NCBI GenBank assembly: GCA_002269645.1
Contig: NIVC01000962.1
Location: 248,001-312,000 of the forward strand
Direction: 5' to 3'
Origin: Macrostomum lignano
Lineage: Eukaryota
Length of the DNA stretch: 64,000 nt
Below are positions 9,908 to 48,581 of this stretch, piece after piece. The notes under the pieces are model-generated. The model did not search any database. It saw nothing but the letters and a program-made list of their open reading frames with translations, and had not been told where the DNA came from. Numbering within the stretch: the first letter of the stretch is position 1; each line of letters begins with the position of its first letter. The position numbers were made by a program, and so were the translations under genes.

Positions 9908-10190
9908 TCCGGTTGCTGGCTTCCTGATTGTCACTGATCGGGCCAGCCCGATGAATTAAAGATTCAAAGAAAAAGTCGCTGGTTTACGAAAGAGTCTACT
10001 GACAAGTAGAGAGTATAGAATGTTAAGCAAAAGCGTATCAAAGTCCAGATTTTTTACAGCCGGCTGAAATACACCTTGACTTACTTACTTGACTTAGCTG
10101 CAGGGTGGTCCGTAGACACAGCGGGGAGGCGAGGGTCGCCCATTCCGCTAGCCCCTGAAGGTCCGCAGACAGGCAGAGGCGTGGGGCCGG

Positions 10191-13100
10191 TCAGGGTGGT
10201 CCGCCGGTCCGTCCTGCAGCGTGATCTTCCGTTGGGAAGAAACTGGCTCGTCTAGTCGCCCGAAGGAACTGGATGAGCCGTGGGATGCTGTCGGGCTGGA
10301 AGACCTCGTCGATGGACGGGTTCGGCCCGAGGTAGCGTAGCCGGTCTCTGTTAAAGAAAGGGCAGTGACAAACAAAGTGCTGAGCATCTTCATTGTCGTA
10401 CTCGCAAAAGGGGCAAAGTTCGCTCTCGAGGTCACCTCGGAGGAAGCAGTGCCTGGCGAGGTAGCCATGGCCAGTAAGGGTCATGACAAGGGCTCGAATA
10501 TCCTTCCGATTCTGGTTCAGAAGGATGTTTCTTAGCCTGCGAGACGGGCAGGGAACCGCGGCACGAGATTGCCGGCAGTTTTGGGTGCCCGCCCATCTGT
10601 CCCTGTGGAGGGAGTCAGCCCAGTCGTCGATCTGACGATTGATGACTGTCAAGGGCATAGGGACCAGGGGGCAGGGCCGAAGAAAGAGCCAGAGCCGCCC
10701 CTCTTGGCGAGGGTGTCTGCCAGCTCGTTCCCCGGAAAGCCTGCGTGCCCTGGGATCCATTTCAGCCTGACAGTATTGCTACTGGCCAGGAGGTTGAGCT
10801 GCCGGGCGCAGTCGGCGACTGTCCGGGAGTTCGTTGTGGTGTGGCAAAGGGCCTGTAAGGCCGCTTGGCTGTCGGAGTGGATGACAATAGTCTTTCCTCT
10901 CGTACCCTTGGCGTTCAGCTCTGCAGCGCAAGAGCTGATGGCAAGGACTTCGTTCTGGAAGACTGTGGAGAGTCTACCAGTGTGCTGGGCATGCGTGGCA
11001 ATTACGCGGCCGTTGATGATGATGCAGACCCCAAAGCCGGCGCGACCGTCTTTGATGGATCCGTCCGTGTAGCAATGGACCTCCTGGAATTTCCAGTGGT
11101 CATTGGCAGCATCCCTAGAGGGGATGGTGACCTTGTAGCGCTGAAAGAGGTTGAGAGTGCGGGGTTCGCCGTCAGATAGGACGTGGAGCCCGCCGCTGTC
11201 TCTCAAGTCCTTGAGGCAGAGGTCGGCGTGGGGCAAAAGCTTGCGCTTAGCCATGGCCCTATGGGGCTGGATTTGAATGCCAGCGTCAGCTAGACGGCGG
11301 GCAGTCTTGGCCGCTTCCCTGCGGACAAAGATGTCCAGCGGAGGAATGTTGAGGAAGGCGTTGAGGCCATCGTAAGGAGCAGACGGAGGGGCGCTCATGA
11401 TCATGCGACATGCGCGCCCTTGCGCTCTCCTGAGAGCCTCTAGACAGGTCTTTATCTGCAGGGCGCTAGCCCAGATCAGGCCGCCATACGAGATAGCGGG
11501 CCTAACCATTGCAGTGTAGATCCACCAGAGGCGCTTGGGGGTGAGCCCCCAGGTGGTGCCGACAGCCCTGCGCAATTGCGCGAGGACTGCGAAGGCCTTT
11601 TTGGCTTTTGCTTGAACGTGGGGTGACCAGTTCAGCCTGTGGTCCAGGGTAATACCCAGACATTTAGTCTGCTTGCAGAAGGGGATTTCCCTTCCGTAAA
11701 GCGTGAGCGGCCGAATCTGCCACTTGGTCCTGCTGGTGAACATGATCGCTGCGGTCTTAGTCTCAGAGAGCCTTAAGCCACAGCGGTCCGCCCATTGCTC
11801 AGCAGCGTAGATGAAGTTCTGAAGAAGGTCCCTGAGGGTATCAGGGGACGGACCAGATGCCACCGCGGTGACATCGTCCGCATATCCAACTTTCAGAATG
11901 GGGTCAGGCCGAACATCCCGAAGGAGCTCATCGATGACCATATTCCAGAGAACTGGGGACAGCACCCCACCTTGCGGGCTACCTTTGCAGACGGGGACCG
12001 TCCTCTGGTAGCCCAGCAGACTAGCGGTGGCCGTGCGATGGCTGATCATATACATGATCCATCTGGTGAGATGTGAGTGCGTTTGCCTCTCACAAAGAGC
12101 TCTTCGGAACGCCTCAAAGAGGACGTTATCGAAGGCGCCAATGATGTCCAGGAAGATCCCCAGAGCAAAGCCATTACCAAGCACGGCCTTCTCGAGTTTA
12201 TCGACCAGGACGTGCAGCGCGCTTTCAGTGGAGCGACCCGCCCGAAAAGCGTGCTGGTTCTCGCTGAGAGGTTTGTTCTTCAGCTCAACAGAGAGAAGGC
12301 GCCAAAGCACCAGTCTCTCCATCAGCTTGACCAGGGAGGAGGTCAGGCTGATCGGTCTGAAGGATTTGATAGAATGGTAGTCCGGGCGGCCTGGCTTAGG
12401 GATAAAGATCACCTTTGCCTCGGTCCATGCCTGTGGGACATAACCAAGCGTGATGCATGCCCGAAGAAGGCTGCAAATTTTGCGCAGGAAGCCTGGGCAT
12501 TTAACGGCCTCTCTTAGGAGGGCCGGTACAATGCCGTCGGGTCCTGGGGCTTTGAAAGGCTTGAAGGAATTAGCCGCTCTCACGATGCGGTCCTCCGTGA
12601 TGATAGAGGCAGCCAGCGCGTGACCTCCCTCCGAGTGATCCGGAGTGGTCGGGTTAGCTGGCTCGTTGGGGAAGAACGCAGTGAGCATTACATCAAGCGT
12701 TTCCCCTGGGTTGTCCGTGGACGTACCGTCGGTGCGTTTGACCGAGGAGAGCTTAGACATTTTGTCCAGCGTGAGCGCTTTCACAACTCTGGAGGTGGGG
12801 CGTGAGCCCTCTAGCTCCTCACAGTATTGTCGCCATTTTTGAGCCTTTGCATTCCTAACCTGCCTTTTAAACTCATGAATTGCTTCATGATAGGCGGTTT
12901 GGTCCGCTGGGCTCTTAGTTTTAGTTGCTCTGCGGTGGAGTCTCTTAGCCCTGCGACGGAGGTTGCCGAGCTCGGGATTCCACCACGGCGCGGATTTTTT
13001 CCCTTTATAGGCTTTTAAAGGGCAGGACGCCTCAAAGGCGGCGGTTAGCGTCTCTGTCAAAACAGTCGCGCACTCATCCGCCTCTCGGCACGACGTGATC

Positions 13101-13894
13101 GTGAATGGTTGGCCAGGAGACCGATGGAATTCCTTCAGGGCGAGCCCGAAGGTTTCCCAATCAGTATTTCTGGCGTTCCGTCTCCACGTAACACGAGTTG
13201 CGCCACGCGCGGCCATTAGGTTGAAGGAGATGAACTTGTGATCCGAGAGTGAGGACACTGGAAGCACCCGCCACGCTCCAATACTCTGGTAGAGTCTGGG
13301 CGTTGCGAGCGTAGCGTCGATCGCCTCCGACCACCGTCCGTTGTCAAAGGTAGGGGTAGACCCAGAGTTGCAGAACTCGAGGGTCGTAGAGGCAACGTAA
13401 GCTAGGAGGTCTTCGCCTCTCTGATTAATGCCAGTGCTGCCCCAGTGAGTGTGGTGGGCGTTGATGTCGCCGGCAACCATGAGCTCGTAGTTTTTGGCAG
13501 AGCAAAGCTCTACCAGCGTAGCGAGGGCTCTGGGGACGACCGCAGCATCACCTGGTAAGTAAACCGAGGCGATGAGGGTGGTCTTCCCAGGAAGGAGGTC
13601 CTCGGATTGGATGACGCAGATGTCCCTGTTGGACAGGTCCGATCTGAGCCACGCACTGAGCGTTTTGCTCGCAAAGATGCAAGCTCTGGGAGGCTGGTTG
13701 GCCTCGCGAGGGTAAGTATAAAAACAATTATAGCCGTCAGGGGCGTTTTGAGGCTTACCTCTGAGAGTCCAGGGTTCCTGGACGAGGATGAGCCCCGGCT
13801 TGTCGAGCTCGGCGTAACACATAAGGTTGACCGAGGCTGCGACGCAGTGTTGCAGATTAATCTGCAGGCAATGGATTCCCTGGTTGCTGATCAT
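10191..13894 (-). CDS. LINE ORF2: AP endonuclease, reverse transcriptase, RNase H and C-terminal CCHC finger; one frameshift near 10670
   Basis: APE motifs QINLQH, LVQEP, GDINAH, SDH. RT motifs KAPGPDG, FRPISL, GSPQGGVLSP, YADD. RNase H motifs YTDGS, HSDSQAAL, WIPGHAGFPGNELAD. CPFC..H..C lies in the 10191-10760 frame, which joins the main frame if one C is added to a C5 run. Confidence 0.9.
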
Positions 13895-13896
13895 TA

Positions 13897-15363
13897 TCAC
13901 GCAGTTGGGGAATCGTTGAGCAGATCATCCTCCTCCTTTTCAGTGGTGGGTGACCCGCAGACCTCCATGGGAGTTTCAGCGTCCTCAGCAGTTAGGGTGG
14001 CTGTGGAGTCCTCCGCGGACGTGAGCCCAGCGTGGACGTTACCGTCGCCTCCCCTGCGTGCTTCGTTGCTGTCACTGCCCGTCCCCTCTGCCTCGTCGGT
14101 CAGGTCGATGCGGGTGGCGCCAGCCTCCTGGTGAGTCACAGACTCGAACCAGTCGGTCGGAGCCTCCCCGCTTAGAGCCTGGCCTTCTGGCTGTTGGGGT
14201 GGAGCGCGAGAGGCGCGGGCCCGCTCACGATGCGCCCGAAGGCTCTTGGCCTGGTCCAGCGCGCGCTGGATCAGGCCGGACCTCCGGGTGCTCCTGGCGG
14301 GTCTGCGATTTCGGTTTCCGGTTTCAGCAGCGCGAACTGCCTTACCGGGCATAGGATCGACCGTTTGCCTCGGCTTCTTTGCCGGAGGAGCCTGGGCCCC
14401 AGTTCCGGTTTCGGAAGCCTTGGCATTCTTGGCTTCATCAGCTTTCCGCTCCTCGCAACGGAGGATGGTCAGCTGAGTCAGACCAATATGAATTGTGGAC
14501 TTAGGCGGCAAGCGCTTAGCCCAGTCATCAGAGAGCCCTAGGATCACCGTAGCCCCCTTCTCCTTGCGGGAAGTGGCGTGGTGTAGGAGCCCATTGACCT
14601 CAAGGTCGGGGTGCAGCTTTAGCAATATTTGCCTAAGCTGATCTCCGGACTTAATGGCACTGCCGGCCGGGATCCAGACGCGAAAGCGCTGGGTCTTCTG
14701 TCGCTCGCCCTCGCTGGCGAAGACGAGCTTGCCGAGCTTCTTGGGCCAGTTCAGCTTTGGCAGAAGCTCGCGTAGACTGCGGCTGCTCTCCTCCGAGTTG
14801 CACCAGATGAAGATGCAGCCGTCGGTCTTGGCAGACTTGACCACGCTCACAGGGCGGCCCGCCAGGAGCTGGTCGATGAGCGCAGCATCAATGGTGCGCC
14901 AGGCACTGTCGAGCTCGTCGGCCGTGAGGTCCTGCTCTTCCCCGAAGACGATGACCGCCGGTTGGAGCTTGACCTTTGAGGCATAGTTGGTGGCGGCGGT
15001 TCCCGAAGGCCCGGCCGCGCTTGTAGCAGGTTTACTGGGTGGCTCACCAGCGGGGGTTGTATCCTGGGGGGCAGGGGTTGCTGTGGCTCCTTTCGGCCCA
15101 ACAGCAGCCTCGCCCTCCCTAGGTTCCCCCTTCGCCGGTGGCCGGCCCGCAGTATCCCGCAGTCACCGTCGTCGCTCGTTGCGGCGTTGGTTACGGGCGC
15201 GTCGGGCTTCAGCGGAGGGCCCGGTTGCGCGTGCGGGCATGTCACCGGCGGAGCCGGCGGCAAGCCCATCTGCCCCCGGTGGGGCGGCGCTGGTGCCAGA
15301 GTCACCGGCCGGAGTTGCCGGGGCCCCGGCTTCAGCGGGGTTTAAAGAGGCGGGTGACGCCAT
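13897..15363 (-). CDS. LINE ORF1 (489 codons) with one in-frame TGA at 15163-15165
   Basis: The 15363 ATG and the 13897-14850 ORF share a frame; hand translation across 15165-14850 shows only one stop. No CCHC knuckle is visible. Confidence 0.75.
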
Positions 15364-15546
15364 AGCTGAAAGCGGGAAGGAGTGAGCTGAGTCACAAAAG
15401 AAAGAGGAAAGAAGAAAAAGAAAAGGACCGCTAGCGACCGGACAACCCCCCGGCCTTCCAGCCCATCGGCACGGTCAAACACCTTAGGCATTAGGGGGTA
15501 CGTTAAGCAGTACCACGGCCTGCAGGCTGGCAAGCCAGACCTGCAT

Positions 15547-15833
15547 ACCCAAGTTCGGCCGAAGCCACTGGATGGGTCACCAGCGTCGGAGCCCAGTCTG
15601 TCCAGCAGCCCTAGGGTCTGCCTTGAACACACGCGGGGACGAGTACCCTGGGTCGACTTGCGAAACAGCGTGAGGGGGGGGGTCTGCGGTTGCCAGCGGC
15701 AAATAGCGGGTGCAGACCTCCCTCCAGCCTTGACCTGCTGAAGATAGGGGCAGGCGTGAAGCATCGCAGACCGTAGCCCATAGGCCTGGTCTGTCTCATA
15801 CTTCACTGGCGTGCTGAATACACCTTCGCGTGC
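15547..15833 (-). ncRNA. HDV-like self-cleaving ribozyme at the LINE 5' end
   Basis: P1 GCACGCG/CGCGUGU with G1-U wobble; P2 ACCCA/UGGGU; P3 GGG/CCC; L3 UACUCGU; P1.1 AC/GU; P4 UCAAGGC/GCUUCGG; J4/2 containing CGAA. G1 (15833) directly abuts the TSD. Confidence 0.8.
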
Positions 15834-16228
15834 GAAATACACCTTTTCTCAGCATGAATTTAAAATGAAATTATTCATTGCAAAAAAGTTCACCCTACAA
15901 ATACGATTTATTGCAAACTTTGTTTTTCAAAAATATTTAACAGAAAATTGAAATCTTCAAGTAGAACGAGCGGCTGAATTTGCACAGACAAAGTTGAATT
16001 GCAGATAAATTTTGTAAAATTCTGCGAGCCAATTAACGCCTCCTCAACCTGAGTGTTGCGTCCGGATACAACAGAGAGGCTGTGCATGCATGAGAATGAA
16101 TGCTAATGCAATTGCAGACGATGCCAAAGTCACGAGGTTAAATGAAGTTTGATGCAAAGAAACAGCTGCTTGTGGCGTGCTGGATAGTTACTGTGGTGAG
16201 GTCGGAGGCTCAGGGAGCCCTAGGCTGC

Positions 16229-16662
16229 TCAGGCTCCCAGACGCGTGACCTGCAGCAGTGTGGCGCTCGGACTGGCGCTAACCCTGACGATGGGGCCGTT
16301 GCGAAGCACTATCAGACGGGCCCAGTCTCCGGGCTGCAGGCGCAGCTTCCTCTGCACTGAGCAGCCTGTCCGGGACACCGCCGCTGGCCGGCCGTTCACC
16401 AGCAGGCCGACCGGCACAGCGGAGGCCTGCTCGGGCGAGGTGAACGTCACGTGACCGAACAGGTCGTAGATGCCGGCCATGCTGATGCGGACTCGACCGT
16501 CGGCTGGCGACAGTCGGAATGGCGACGGCTCTGAGCAGTCGGGACCGACACAGCGGAGCGGGGCCAGCGACATGGTGCCTGCGGGATCGATTGTTCGGTC
16601 GACTGATTGGTCGGTTGCTTGATTTATTGGGCGATAGGTTGATTGGGTGATTAATTGGTTGG

Positions 16663-16697
<35 letters not shown>

Positions 16698-16782
16698 ATT
16701 GATTGGTTGGTTGATTGATTGATTGATCGATTGATTGATTGGTTGATTGGTTGGTTGATTGGTTGATAGATTGATTAGTTGG

Positions 16783-23885: not shown

Positions 23886-24389
23886 GCAAGGTTTTCCGTC
23901 TACTATAATATATATATCAGTAAGTCAATTCTTGCTTACATGTTGAAAATTGATTAATCAGTCAAATTTTTTTGCTAAAGACAAGCAGATAATATCGATG
24001 CGAAGATGTTTATTTCAAATCAAAATGACTGCGCTATGAGTGACAAGAATATGCATTACTGAGGACATGGTAGAGCAGAACAGGATACTTCGCAATCAGC
24101 AAACTAATATTCTAATTTAGAATACTTTCTATTGCTGCAAAATTAACTGGTAGATTTTACGATAAAAAAATGCCTCACATATGAGAGTACTACTAATGCT
24201 TCAGTAGGCACAGGCGAACAAATAGACTGGCAGACAAATACTGACAAACTGGCAGTGATGGACATGGCAAATAGTGCTGCCAAATTCTTAACTGAGAGTC
24301 CACTACGAGTATTTTAAGCACAATAGAGCATTGCTAGAAGGACTGAGCCTGAGTATCTGGGAGGGCGGCAGCTTTCAGCTCAGGAGCTG

Positions 24390-25577
24390 GGAGTGTGGAA
24401 TCCTTCAACTGAGGATCTGGGAGTGTGGAATCCTCCGACTGAGGATCTGGGAGTGTGGAATCCTCCGACTGAGGATCTGGGAGTGTGGAATCCTCCGACT
24501 GAGGATCTGGGAGTGTGGAATCCTCCGACTGAGGATCTGGGAGTGTGGAATCCTCCGACTGAGGATCTGGGAGTGTGGAATCCTCCGACTGAGAATCTGG
24601 GAGTGTGGAATCCTCCGACTGAGGATCTGGGAGTGTGGAATCCTCCGACTGAGGATCTGGGAGTGTGGAATCCTCCGACTGAGGATCTGGGAGTGTGGAA
24701 TCCTCCGACTGAGGATCTGGGAGTGTGGAATCCTCCGACTGAGGATCTGGGAGTGTGGAATCCTCCGACTGAGAATCTGGGAGTGTGGAATCCTCCGACT
24801 GAGGATCTGGGAGTGTGGAATCCTCCGACTGAGGATCTGGGAGTGTGGAATCCTTCAACTGAGGATCTGGGAGTGTGGAATCCTCCGACTGAGGATCTGG
24901 GAGTGTGGAATCCTCCGACTGAGGATCTGGGAGTGTGGAATCCTCCGACTGAGAATCTGGGAGTGTGGAATCCTCCGACTGAGAATCTGGGAGTGTGGAA
25001 TCCTCCGACTGAGGATCTGGGAGTGTGGAATCCTCCGACTGAGGATCTGGGAGTGTGGAATCCTCCGACTGAGAATCTGGGAGTGTGGAATCCTCCGACT
25101 GAGAATCTGGGAGTGTGGAATCCTCCGACTGAGAATCTGGGAGTGTGGAATCCTCCGACTGAGAATCTGGGAGTGTGGAATCCTCCGACTGAGAATCTGG
25201 GAGTGTGGAATCCTCCGACTGAGAATCTGGGAGTGTGGAATCCTCCGACTGAGAATCTGGGAGTGTGGAATCCTCCGACTGAGAATCTGGGAGTGTGGAA
25301 TCCTCCGACTGAGAATCTGGGAGTGTGGAATCCTCCGACTGAGAATCTGGGAGTGTGGAATCCTCCGACTGAGAATCTGGAGTGTGGAATCCTCCGACTG
25401 AGAATCTGGGAGTGTGGAATCCTCCGACTGAGAATCTGGGAGTGTGGAATCCTCCGACTGAGAATCTGGGAGTGTGGAATCCTCCGACTGAGAATCTGGG
25501 AGTGTGGAATCCTCCGACTGAGAATCTGGGAGTGTGGAATCCTCCGACTGAGAATCTGGGAGTGTGGAATCCTCCGA
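24390..25577. repeat. 30-bp minisatellite (GAGTGTGGAATCCTCCGACTGAG[G/A]ATCTGG), about 39 copies
   Basis: Direct reading; explains the repetitive ORFs on both strands. Confidence 0.95.
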
Positions 25578-25659
25578 TGCATCGCCTACCTCCCTGAGAC
25601 TGAAGCAGCACTAAGAACGCAATAAAGGCCACCACAGACGGAGAGAGAACTGATGCCCG

Positions 25660-38166: not shown

Positions 38167-38788
38167 CACAGATACTAGAATAACTAGATGTGTCACTCGC
38201 AATGAAAATTGTGAAAAAGTAGAGCCTCTACTCTTTTTAAAGTAGTTGTCTGCGCTAATATAATTTAAATTTGATGTAGAAGGTAAAATTCCTTTCCTTC
38301 CTCAGGGCTTGCGGCCTCAAGAGCATATGGGATTAAGAATGAACAAGCATTTGTTAACTAAATGTACACAAATGAACGCAAGACGGACGAAACTCAGCCT
38401 AGGGGGGGGGGGGGCAGGCCCAATCTAGCTCAGCCAATGAGAGAGCAGTAGAGAGATGTCTGGGCGCCAGCACTAATTCTCTCTTGCTCTCTATGCCAAG
38501 CACTGAATTTGGAAATTTTACATTTTTATAGTTCTCTACAGTCTTAAGTCTTAAATTCGTTTATTTTTGAACCGGTAAAACTCAGCAGACATGCTTATTT
38601 AATTAGCCTGCTTGTAGAATTAGACACAGACAAATTTTGCAGCTTTAAAAACTTTAAATTTCGTTCAAAAGTAGATAAATTTTAATTTCACTTTTATAAA
38701 GGCAAAAAACGCTAATTTTGCTACTGAAAAAATGAGTAGAGAAACGCATTTTTTGCGAGTGACACATCTAGTTATTCTAGTATCTGTG
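38167..38788. mobile_element. Non-autonomous DNA transposon (622 bp), P-element-like or hAT
   Basis: Perfect 36-bp TIRs CACAGATACTAGAATAACTAGATGTGTCACTCGCAA (38167-38202 and 38753-38788). Perfect 8-bp TSD GCTGTAAT at 38159-38166 and 38789-38796. Confidence 0.85.
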
Positions 38789-39339
38789 GCTGTAATAGAG
38801 TTTCGCCTTTGCAAAGTTATTTACACAACATATCGGTTGCTTGTTGGAGTCCTTAGTTTTGATTGTAATTTGATAATTTATTAGCTGTGTGGGAATTGTT
38901 ATAAAATTTTCCCACAGCCTAATGTCAAAGAGTTTGACTTTCAAAAAATATTTATTTTTCAGTTTCTGACTGAAGCATTATTGTGTTGTCTTCACATTTG
39001 TTTTAAAGTGCTTGATTGCTGTATTTATTTGCATATTCGTATAGCTAATTCAATAATGTAGCAATCATACATAATATGGGAACGATGTAGCATTCTATCG
39101 TATTTCAGCACTATGCTGCATACTGTATCATATGCTATAACTTCGACAATTTTAATAAAAATTTAACAAAGATTGTGAGTCTTCGTTTCGCGGTGTCGTT
39201 CTGTCTACTGCTGGCCTCTTGCTTGTCGCCGCATTTCGCTATTGGCTTCGGTAGTTTCCTTTGTTCACTTCTTCACCCACCGCATCTGCACCTGCCGCTT
39301 TGACACTTCAATTTTGTGTCCGTCTGTGCCTCTTTGTGT

Positions 39340-40484: not shown

Positions 40485-48581
<8,097 letters not shown>

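What the first reader, a model, noticed from the sequence alone, without database searches (positions are those of the whole stretch)
15547..15833. HDV-like self-cleaving ribozyme defining the exact 5' end of a LOA-like LINE, with a covarying P1.1 and a 173-nt J1/2
Seen on the minus strand: P1 5' GCACGCG (15833-15827) pairs with CGCGUGU (15635-15629), with the canonical G1-U wobble. P2 ACCCA (15653-15649) pairs with UGGGU (15551-15547). P3 GGG/CCC encloses L3 UACUCGU; the canonical L3 is UCCUCGC-like. The L3 A-C dinucleotide is matched by G-U immediately after P1 (15628-15627), so the usual C-G pair of P1.1 appears swapped to A-U. P4 UCAAGGC/GCUUCGG is followed by CCGAAC, with the putative catalytic C at 15557. 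The predicted cleavage site (before 15833) is exactly the boundary set independently by the 12-bp TSD. J1/2 (15826-15654) has its own helices (GUGAAGUAU/AUGCUUCAC; GGUCUGC/GCAGACC). Established: HDV-like ribozymes process the 5' ends of R2, RTE, L1Tc/ingi and some LOA/R1-group elements. Inferred: this is an active variant in a flatworm LINE that descriptor searches with short J1/2 and a fixed CC/GG P1.1 would miss.
Basis: partly seen in the sequence, partly recalled or inferred. Interest (0 to 1): 0.85.

Follow-up and report, generated by a model that had tools for sequence, protein, structure and literature searches.

The report
HDV-like ribozyme heading a flatworm LINE
The first ~250 bases of a jumping gene (LINE) in the flatworm Macrostomum lignano very probably fold into a self-cutting RNA of the well-known hepatitis-delta-like type. 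This RNA trims the element's transcript to its exact start, which is a new example of a known trick rather than a new kind of thing.

Summary
The sequence features are real. A 12-bp target-site duplication brackets a 5,756-nt minus-strand LINE (15833..10078; APE+RT+RNase H; Macrostomum lignano). Its first 7 nt pair with the 7 nt directly after a GGG/UACUCGU/CCC hairpin, followed by a 2-nt P1.1.

A loose HDV-like descriptor alone is not above chance: about 5 hits per shuffled window against 2 real. The same core anchored on the TSD-defined first base occurred in 0 of 20,000 shuffles.

The only alignable relative (L001, ORF2 62% identical) starts at the homologous base. It keeps P1, P1.1, P2 and P4 through compensatory changes. 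Three distant relatives carry canonical HDV-like ribozymes at the same place, about 1.7-2.0 kb upstream of ORF2.

A compact version is conserved and covaries: P4 hairpin 15622-15604, candidate catalytic C15600, P2' 15595-15585. However, its J4/2 is less canonical, so the catalytic C remains unsettled.

A long J1/2 and P1.1 variants are already documented, so this is a new member of a known kind. This copy has a frameshifted ORF2. Cleavage itself is untested.

The parts
15834..15845 (-). 5' copy of the target-site duplication, AAGGTGTATTTC
   Evidence: Identical 12-mer at 10066-10077.
10078..15833 (-). The LINE insertion (5,756 nt): structured 5' UTR, ORF1 region, ORF2 (APE, RT, RNase H), 3' UTR and an (AAGT)n-like tail
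   Evidence: Pfam hits. Homologues are named Macrostomum lignano. TSD. It is the only copy in the window.
15827..15833 (-). P1 5' strand, GCACGCG. The predicted cleavage is 5' of G15833.
   Evidence: It forms 7 bp with 15629-15635 in both the MFE and the centroid fold. RNAalifold with L001 keeps the helix, with 2 double compensatory changes. Shuffle test 0/20000.
15813..15826 (-). Leader nt 8-21, AAGGUGUAUUCAGC: a near-copy of the integration target (TSD + AGC). It overlaps a second P1-like heptamer, GCACGCC, at 15808-15814.
   Evidence: Read directly. Unexplained.
15658..15826 (-). J1/2, about 170 nt and itself structured. Helices: 15798-15806 with 15756-15764, and 15712-15718 with 15681-15687.
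   Evidence: MFE fold. The first hairpin is conserved, with 3 double compensatory changes against L001. The motif is unique in the window.
15649..15657 (-). P2 5' strand, compact model: GUCG-A-CCCA.
   Evidence: RNAalifold. 16/16 cells paired and 2 compensatory changes.
15636..15648 (-). P3 GGG / L3 UACUCGU / P3' CCC
   Evidence: L001 has GGG UCUCCGU CCC at the homologous place.
15627..15635 (-). P1 3' strand CGCGUGU (15629-15635) and the P1.1 dinucleotide GU (15627-15628)
   Evidence: P1.1 is A-U + C-G here and C-G + U-G in L001.
15601..15626 (-). J1.1/4 UCAA and the P4 hairpin GGCAGaCC-CUAG-GGCUGCU, with a possible extension UCAA/UGGA
   Evidence: Constrained folds. L001 has an 11-bp hairpin of different sequence at the same place.
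15596..15600 (-). J4/2 of the compact model, CAGAC. C15600 is the candidate catalytic C.
   Evidence: Inferred from the conserved P2/P4. L001 has CUGC directly after an A-G closed P4. Not canonical in L001, which has no A.
15585..15595 (-). P2 3' strand, compact model: UGGG-CUC-CGAC
15547..15558 (-).
   Evidence: Present. The GGC-N-RAA motif resembles the J4/2 of the distant relatives L010, L011 and L062. The P2 and P4 that go with it are not kept in L001.
15521..15545 (-). Conserved hairpin with a CUUG loop, downstream of the ribozyme
   Evidence: The stem covaries with L001 (CUGG/CCAG against CCGGG/CCCGG).
10649..13900 (-). ORF2 (APE, RT, RNase H). Its C-terminal ~160 aa continue in another frame (10191-10760).
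   Evidence: Pfam. tblastn with L001 ORF2 changes frame between about 10652 and 10676.
13897..15305 (-). ORF1 region, listed as two ORFs (14847-15305 and 13897-14850)
   Evidence: 37% identity to L001 ORF1 over residues 182-453. No Pfam family.
10066..10095 (-). 3' tail AAGUCAAGUAAGUAAGUC (10078-10095) and the 3' TSD copy (10066-10077)

Best explanation
The 5' end of this Macrostomum lignano LINE encodes an HDV-like (nested double-pseudoknot) self-cleaving ribozyme. Read-through transcripts from upstream host DNA would be cut immediately 5' of G15833. That leaves an RNA whose first base is the first base of the element, and this RNA is then copied back into the genome by target-primed reverse transcription. 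The element lies 74 nt downstream of an AATAAA, on the same strand as a possible host ORF.

Shown here:
- the helices and their positions
- the coincidence with the TSD
- conservation and covariation of P1, P1.1, P2 and P4 in one relative
- canonical ribozymes at the same place in distant relatives

Inferred: catalysis, and co-transcription with host DNA.

- P1 15833-15827 with 15635-15629
- structured J1/2 of about 170 nt
- P2 15657-15649 with 15595-15585
- P3/L3 15648-15636
- P1.1 A15644-U15627 and C15643-G15628
- P4 hairpin 15622-15604
- J4/2 CAGAC with catalytic C15600

On this anatomy the ribozyme ends near 15585, not 15547.
For: - TSD and position: a perfect 12-bp TSD puts the element's first base at G15833. 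The HDV-type core anchored on that heptamer occurs in 0/20000 shuffles.
- L3 (UACUCGU) has U at position 1 and C-G at positions 5-6, as in the canonical relatives' UCCACGU(U) and in the Rfam consensus lines shown.
- P1 is formed in the MFE and centroid folds of the 334-nt leader.
- L001 was found only by ORF2 homology (62%). Its contig begins at the homologous base, 32 nt before the conserved GUAUGAGA in both sequences.
- RNAalifold closes the domain with P1 in both sequences. A-U becomes C-G, C-G becomes U-A, and G-U becomes G-C.
- P1.1 changes from A-U/C-G to C-G/U-G.
- Compact P2: 16/16 cells paired, 2 double changes, and 25-44% paired when the partners are slid. L001 has two extra nucleotides on each strand of the P3-proximal P2 segment (CUCAGA/UCUGAG, 6 bp, against CCCA/UGGG, 4 bp), and they stay complementary; this follows.
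- Constrained folding prefers the compact P2 in the window: -67.3 against -60.1 to -65.4 kcal/mol.
- Distant relatives L010, L011 and L062 (31-35% ORF2 identity) carry canonical cores 1.7-2.0 kb upstream of ORF2, two of them with J1/2 of about 150-160 nt. L011, which has a short J1/2, gets full-length sub-threshold matches to Rfam HDV-F-prausnitzii (25.7 bits) and drz-agam-1.
- Literature: HDV-like ribozymes cut at the 5' end of R4, Dong, Baggins and L1Tc elements, and J1/2 can be hundreds of nt (PMC3774820).
Against: - No cleavage data exist.
- Rfam gives no hit, even at E up to 10. The long-J1/2 relatives are equally invisible, so this weighs little.
- Only one alignable relative exists, so covariation rests on two sequences. 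The shuffle control is uninformative (126/500).
- The loose descriptor is common by chance.
- L001's P1 is 6 bp in a register shifted by one, unless an unseen upstream U exists.
- The compact J4/2 is not canonical. The window has CAGAC. L001 has CUGC, with no adenosine.
- In L001 the two P2 models are thermodynamically equal: -90.5 against -91.4 kcal/mol.
- A second P1-like heptamer (GCACGCC, 15814-15808) could offer an alternative cut site.
- This copy has a frameshifted ORF2.
Confidence: 0.7

Rival explanations
1. It is the same ribozyme, but with the reader's 3' half: a large P4 domain (15626-15559), J4/2 CCGAACU with catalytic C15558 or C15557, and P2' UGGGU 15551-15547. This is a sub-case of the best explanation, so its probability is counted inside the 0.7.
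For: ACCCA/UGGGU is 5 Watson-Crick bp. GGC-C-GAAC in the window and GGC-UAAAC at the aligned place in L001 resemble the J4/2 of the canonical relatives: L010 GGCCAAA, L011 GGCUAAAU, L062 GGCGAAAU. They also resemble the GGCUAA of the Rfam consensus aligned. A distal helix GCAAGYC/GGCUUGC exists in both sequences and is the constrained MFE in L001.
Against: In L001 the homologous P2 keeps only 3 of 5 pairs, and the P4 closing helix loses pairs with no compensation: 77% paired and 0 double changes. A 5-bp complement within 150 nt is expected by chance at roughly 0.15 (my estimate). In the window the GGCUUGC strand is locked in a 10-bp CUUG hairpin. Model A energies in the window are 2-7 kcal/mol worse.
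Confidence: 0.27
2. It is a structured but non-catalytic 5' leader. The terminal helix merely closes a conserved RNA domain, such as a protein-binding, promoter or translation element. The 5' end is set by transcription initiation from an internal promoter, as in many I/jockey-type LINEs.
For: The most conserved part of the leader is the J1/2 hairpin, not the catalytic core. The leader contains Inr-like TCAGC/CAGT motifs. J4/2 is ambiguous. There is no Rfam hit.
Against: It does not explain several features together: the P3/L3 hairpin abutting the P1 3' strand with zero spacing; the L3 letters U...CG.; the covarying 2-bp P1.1; and a P2 that encloses the whole. It also does not explain why distant relatives have canonical HDV-like ribozymes at the same place.
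Confidence: 0.2
3. It is a chance descriptor match in GC-rich sequence, with no function.
For: The loose descriptor gives about 5 hits per shuffled window. A second, weak hit exists at 38809.
Against: The position-anchored test gives 0/20000. There is also conservation with compensatory changes in L001.
Confidence: 0.03

Closest known systems
HDV-like ribozymes of R2/R4-clade elements (Eickbush and colleagues; PMC3774820), including the planarian R2
   Same: A double-pseudoknot ribozyme at the 5' end of a non-LTR element that releases the element RNA from a co-transcript. P1 is 6-7 bp and covaries. P4 is variable. J1/2 can be very large (216-498 nt in silkmoths) and P1-P1' separations exceed 700 nt in honeybee. 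J1/4 is 0-2 nt.
   Different: R2 is a single-ORF, restriction-like-endonuclease element specific for 28S rDNA, and it often cuts upstream within 28S. Here the element is a two-ORF APE/RT/RNase H LINE with a 12-bp TSD at a non-rDNA site, and the predicted cut is at the element's first base.
HDV-like ribozymes of Baggins1 (Drosophila, LOA clade) and L1Tc/ingi elements (PMC3774820, PMC3185411, PMC4035085)
   Same: APE-type LINEs whose ribozyme cuts at the +1 nucleotide of the element. P1.1 composition and the +1 base vary among them (PMC4035085).
   Different: L1Tc's ribozyme is compact (77 nt) and doubles as a promoter. Here there is a J1/2 of about 170 nt, conserved and structured. The host phylum (Platyhelminthes) is different. 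Clade membership of this LINE was not tested.
Twister-variant ribozymes at the 5' end of Perere-3 (RTE) in Schistosoma mansoni (PMC8501958)
   Same: A flatworm LINE with a 5' self-cleaving ribozyme next to the TSD, a GTAA/AAGT-type 3' repeat, and presumed transcription from host promoters.
   Different: It is a different ribozyme class (twister, not HDV-like). In Perere-3 the TSD supplies the P1 strand, whereas here P1 lies wholly inside the element.
Rfam HDV-like families (RF02682 HDV-F-prausnitzii, RF01787 drz-agam-1)
   Same: The same fold. The distant relative L011 aligns over the whole of both models.
   Different: The window and L001 score nothing. The L3 and P1.1 letters differ, and the long J1/2 breaks the models.

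Membership tests
HDV-like self-cleaving ribozyme | Order of elements: P1 - J1/2 - P2 - P3 - L3 - P3' - P1' - P1.1 - P4 - J4/2 - P2' (nested double pseudoknot) | tested here: met
   My descriptor matches at 15833. All helices were read directly. Two alternative P2'/J4/2 assignments both satisfy the topology.
HDV-like self-cleaving ribozyme | P1 of about 6-7 bp whose 3' strand directly follows P3', with cleavage 5' of the first P1 base | tested here: met
   7 bp with zero spacing. The first base equals the first base after the TSD. The helix covaries with L001. The cut itself was not observed.
HDV-like self-cleaving ribozyme | 3-bp P3 closing an L3 of about 7 nt that carries the conserved U, C and G positions | tested here: met
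   GGG/UACUCGU/CCC. The pattern U-N-C-N-C-G-N matches the canonical relatives' L3, UCCACGU(U), and the Rfam consensus lines.
HDV-like self-cleaving ribozyme | P1.1: two nucleotides after P1' pair with L3 positions 2-3 | tested here: met
   A15644-U15627 and C15643-G15628. L001 has C-G and U-G, so one pair changes on both sides.
HDV-like self-cleaving ribozyme | Catalytic cytosine at the first position of J4/2 (PMC10879173), usually followed by adenosines | tested here: inconclusive
   There are two candidates. C15600 goes with the conserved, covarying P2/P4, but its J4/2 is CAGAC and L001 has CUGC. C15558/C15557 sits in the canonical-looking motif GGCCGAAC, but its P2/P4 are not conserved.
HDV-like self-cleaving ribozyme | P2 of at least 5 bp enclosing P3, P1', P1.1 and P4 | tested here: met
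Compact model: 4+4 bp with a 1x3 internal loop in the window, and 6+4 bp in L001.
HDV-like self-cleaving ribozyme | Divalent-ion-dependent self-scission giving a 5'-OH product, abolished by C-to-U at the catalytic C | not testable with these tools
HDV-like self-cleaving ribozyme | Match to a curated covariance model (Rfam) | tested here: not met
   No hit at gathering threshold or at E up to 10. As a control, relatives with long J1/2 (L010, L062) are also missed, and only the short-J1/2 relative L011 scores, below threshold.
APE-type non-LTR retrotransposon (LINE) with RNase H | APE endonuclease, reverse transcriptase and RNase H domains in ORF2; an upstream ORF1; a TSD; a simple-repeat 3' tail | tested here: met
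   Pfam PF03372/PF14529, PF00078 and PF00075. 12-bp TSD and (AAGT)n tail.
LOA clade specifically | Phylogenetic placement of the RT with named LOA references | not tested
   No named reference sequences were available. The domain set also fits the I, Nimb, Ingi and Tad clades.

The most novel reading that the evidence does not exclude
Nucleotides 8-21 of the element RNA (AAGGUGUAUUCAGC, 15826-15813) are a near-copy of the integration target (TSD AAGGTGTATTTC + AGC), followed by a second P1-like heptamer (GCACGCC). If this is not an integration-time duplication, the 5' leader might guide or bias target choice by base-pairing with the nicked target strand. Alternatively, the ribozyme may have two alternative substrate strands 19 nt apart, which would let the element regenerate or shift its 5' end.
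Probability: 0.1. Interest if true: 0.65.

Novelty: new member of a known kind. Interest (0 to 1): 0.35.

Why it matters
- It adds a free-living flatworm and an APE/RT/RNase H LINE lineage, including uncultured relatives in metagenomes, to the elements that use HDV-like ribozymes to define their 5' ends. In flatworms, only the R2 ribozyme (planarian) and the twister variants of Perere-3 appear in the papers I could search.
- It shows concretely that family models and short-J1/2 descriptors miss such ribozymes, and that a TSD-anchored search recovers them.
- It gives annotators of the M. lignano genome a base-exact 5' end for this family.
- It does not change what is known about the mechanism.

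Tried and rejected
- Rfam at gathering threshold on the whole window, and at E up to 10 on 15450-15900: no ribozyme hit.
- blastn of the element against the window: no second copy. A search for the conserved J1/2 motif found only the element itself.
- Protein searches meant to reach more 5' UTRs. L001 ORF1 found only itself and one M. lignano protein without DNA. The 166-aa ORF over the leader found nothing.
- Exact look-up of the window's ORF2: not on record.
- Contigs of closer relatives either have no DNA (P0002) or stop inside ORF1 (P0007 and P0005).
- Viral contigs: nothing. The genome-contig scan gave only two short, irrelevant fragments.
- The descriptor hit in L039 was rejected. It is a UUCG hairpin inside about 100-nt tandem repeats and is not kept in the next repeat.
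- The hit at window 38809 (AAA/UUU P3) is taken as chance.
- A TSD search around the ribozymes of L010, L011 and L062 was inconclusive.
- A covariance model from the three canonical relatives was abandoned. MAFFT misaligned the 3' halves, and the model's J4/2 preference would not have been independent evidence.
- I considered that the true 5' end is about 15812, with a 15-bp imperfect TSD. I rejected it because P1 pairs with nt 1-7 in both the window and L001, and both have 32 nt before GUAUGAGA.

Full report
**What is there.**
Read on the minus strand, window 15833..10078 is a 5,756-nt insertion bracketed by a perfect 12-bp direct repeat, AAGGTGTATTTC (15845-15834 and 10077-10066). It ends in an AAGUCAAGUAAGUAAGUC tail. 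It encodes an ORF2 with APE endonuclease, reverse transcriptase and RNase H domains, preceded by an ORF1 region with no Pfam family. No other copy lies in the window.

ORF2 changes frame near 10652-10676 relative to its closest intact relative, so this copy is probably not autonomous. The insertion lies 74 nt downstream of an AATAAA (15912-15907), which follows a 114-codon ORF on the same strand. That setting would allow read-through co-transcription.

**Checking the observation.**
I wrote a descriptor for the HDV-like fold. The candidate is one of two hits on both strands of the window. Block-wise dinucleotide shuffles of the window give 4.9 hits on average, so a loose descriptor match means nothing by itself.

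The informative test is positional. I kept the TSD-defined first heptamer and shuffled the next 900 nt. The core (3-bp P3, L3 of type U...CG., P3', an immediately following 7-bp complement of the heptamer, then a 2-bp P1.1) appeared in 0 of 20,000 shuffles. Without the L3 letters it appeared in 40 of 20,000. The long-range P1 is also present in the minimum-free-energy and centroid folds of the 334-nt leader.

**Relatives.**
The protein database holds almost nothing from this family with DNA attached. One Logan contig, L001, has ORF2 62% identical to the window's and intact ORF1 and ORF2. It has an alignable leader. It begins at the base homologous to 15833: in both sequences 32 nt precede the conserved GUAUGAGA. 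Its core is GGG UCUCCGU CCC GCAGGCA GG, against the window's GGG UACUCGU CCC CGCGUGU GU.

RNAalifold on the two leaders closes the domain with P1 in both. There are two pairs changed on both sides and one changed on one side. In L001 the helix is 6 bp in a register shifted by one, or 7 bp in the window's register if an unseen upstream U exists. P1.1 is A-U/C-G in the window and C-G/U-G in L001. The J1/2 hairpin 15806-15756 is the best conserved part of the leader and has three compensatory changes.

**Distant relatives.**
A scan of JGI metagenome contigs with an ORF2 alignment returned 80 loci, with best-segment identities of 25-42%. The relatives used below, L010, L011 and L062, are 34-36% identical. 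Roughly twenty of the 80 loci have at least 2 kb upstream of the ORF2 match, by my count from the table. Three of these carry canonical HDV-like cores on the coding strand:
- L010: ACC UCCACGUU GGU + P1' + GG.
- L011: the same core.
- L062: GCC UCCACGU GGC.

These cores sit 1.7-2.0 kb upstream of ORF2, as in the window. L010 and L062 have J1/2 of about 150-160 nt. L011 has a short J1/2 and is the only one Rfam can see: full-length but sub-threshold matches to HDV-F-prausnitzii (25.7 bits, E 0.5) and drz-agam-1. So the absence of an Rfam hit in the window says little, and a 5' HDV-like ribozyme with a long J1/2 appears to be a feature of this LINE group. One further descriptor hit (L039) turned out to be a tetraloop hairpin inside tandem repeats and was discarded.

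- A large P4 domain, 15626-15559.
- J4/2 CCGAACU with C15557.
- P2' UGGGU, 15551-15547.

Model B, compact:
- P4 is the hairpin GGCAGaCC-CUAG-GGCUGCU (15622-15604).
- J4/2 is CAGAC, starting at C15600.
- P2 is GUCG-A-CCCA (15657-15649) with UGGG-CUC-CGAC (15595-15585).

Evidence for model B:
- RNAalifold on the window and L001 predicts model B's P2.
- Counted on that alignment, all 16 cells pair, two pairs change on both sides, and sliding the partners drops pairing to 25-44%.
- L001 has two extra nucleotides on both strands of the P3-proximal P2 segment, and they remain complementary (CUCAGA/UCUGAG).
- L001's P4 is an 11-bp hairpin of unrelated sequence at the same place. It is closed by an A-G juxtaposition and followed at once by a C. 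The canonical relatives L010 and L062 show the same junction: A, then the P4 5' strand ... P4 3' strand, then G-C.
- Model A's P2 and P4, counted the same way, are 77% paired with no compensatory change and several broken pairs.
- Folding with P3 forced and L3, P1' and P1.1 kept single-stranded prefers model B in the window: -67.3 against -60.1 to -65.4 kcal/mol.

Evidence for model A:
- In L001 the two models tie: -90.5 against -91.4 kcal/mol.
- Its J4/2 (GGC-C-GAAC in the window, GGC-UAAAC in L001) looks like the GGC-N-AAA of the canonical relatives and of the Rfam consensus.
- Model B's J4/2 has no adenosine in L001.

I estimate the chance of such a motif within 150 nt at roughly 0.1-0.15, so it is suggestive, not decisive. 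I rate model B about 60:40 over model A. The identity of the catalytic C is open.

**How it most likely works.**
The shown and inferred steps are these:
1. Pol II read-through from upstream host DNA transcribes into the element (inferred from the setting).
2. The leader folds, and the 5' heptamer pairs 190 nt downstream next to the P3/L3 hairpin (shown as structure and covariation).
3. The J4/2 cytosine cuts 5' of G15833 (inferred by analogy with R2, R4/Dong, Baggins and L1Tc; PMC3774820, PMC3185411).
4. The 5'-OH RNA, which still carries the folded ribozyme, is translated and reverse-transcribed.
5. New copies therefore begin exactly at the P1 strand. This is consistent with the single TSD-defined junction seen here and with the start of L001.

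**Comparison with what is known.**
HDV-like ribozymes at LINE 5' ends are well established. In R2 elements J1/2 reaches 216-498 nt, and P1 and P1' can be over 700 nt apart (PMC3774820). P1 of 6-7 bp with mismatches at the top, a variable P4 and a J1/4 of 0-2 nt are all within the described range. P1.1 composition and the +1 base vary in trypanosomatid elements (PMC4035085).

In flatworms, the planarian R2 has such a ribozyme (PMC3774820), and Schistosoma Perere-3 uses a twister variant (PMC8501958). I found no paper linking Macrostomum with a LINE ribozyme. The finding is therefore a new member of a known kind.

**An unexplained detail.**
Element nt 8-21 (AAGGUGUAUUCAGC) nearly repeat the target (TSD + AGC). 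Element nt 20-26 (GCACGCC) nearly repeat the P1 strand. The junction therefore reads as two 19-nt units, identical at 16 of 19 positions.

This is not a simple extra insertion, because the window and L001 have the same 32-nt distance from the first base to GUAUGAGA. L001's own leader shows no likeness to its 3' flank.

Possible explanations are a template-switch product at integration, a bias towards targets that match the leader, or chance. I estimate a 10-nt exact match between 40 and 60 nt at about 2 in 1,000. The second heptamer could serve as an alternative 6-bp P1. Only other genomic copies can decide.

**Verdict.**
It is an HDV-like 5' ribozyme with about 0.7 probability. Activity and LOA membership are untested. 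Interest is modest.

Noticed in passing
window 15808-15845 (minus strand): The 5' junction reads as two 19-nt near-repeats, AAGGTGTATTTCGCACGCG and AAGGTGTATTCAGCACGCC. The element's nt 8-21 therefore mimic the target site, and a second P1-like heptamer lies 19 nt inside the element.
   Followed up: partly
window 15907-16573 (minus strand): A 114-codon ORF (16229-16573, no Pfam family) is followed by an AATAAA at 15912-15907. The LINE is inserted 74 nt further downstream on the same strand, a setting that would allow read-through co-transcription.
   Followed up: partly
window 10652-10676: ORF2 of this copy changes reading frame just after the RNase H domain. The C-terminal ~160 aa continue in ORF 10191-10760. 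This is either a real frameshift or an assembly error in a C-rich run.
   Followed up: partly
window 41586-47063 (+): An 1,825-aa ORF with Pao/BEL peptidase A17, DUF1759, RT and integrase zinc-binding domains. It is a BEL/Pao LTR retrotransposon.
   Followed up: no
window 24331-25635, both strands: Long overlapping ORFs on both strands with extensin-like and pentapeptide-repeat hits. This is probably a tandem-repeat or low-complexity block rather than genes.
   Followed up: no
window 16600-16700 (minus strand): An (AATC)n-like microsatellite lies upstream of the possible host ORF.
   Followed up: no
window 38587-38809 (minus strand): This is the second descriptor hit (P1 AAGGCGA, P3 AAA/UUU, L3 UUAGCGU). 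It has a weak P3 and no TE context, and hits at this rate are expected by chance.
   Followed up: partly
L001 1-17: The P1 strand of L001 can instead form a local hairpin (CCUGC-AAUG-GCAGG) with a near-copy of its own P1' sequence. This is a possible alternative pairing that would compete with P1.
   Followed up: no
window 15521-15586 (minus strand) and L001 about 235-300: Downstream of the compact ribozyme, both elements keep a second hairpin with an ACCCA-containing loop, the motif GGGUA (which could pair with that loop) and a covarying CUUG-loop hairpin. The function is unknown; translation or protein binding are possibilities.
   Followed up: partly
L039 55-300: The 5' region of this metagenomic relative consists of about 100-nt tandem repeats. 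One repeat mimicked a ribozyme core (a false positive).
   Followed up: yes
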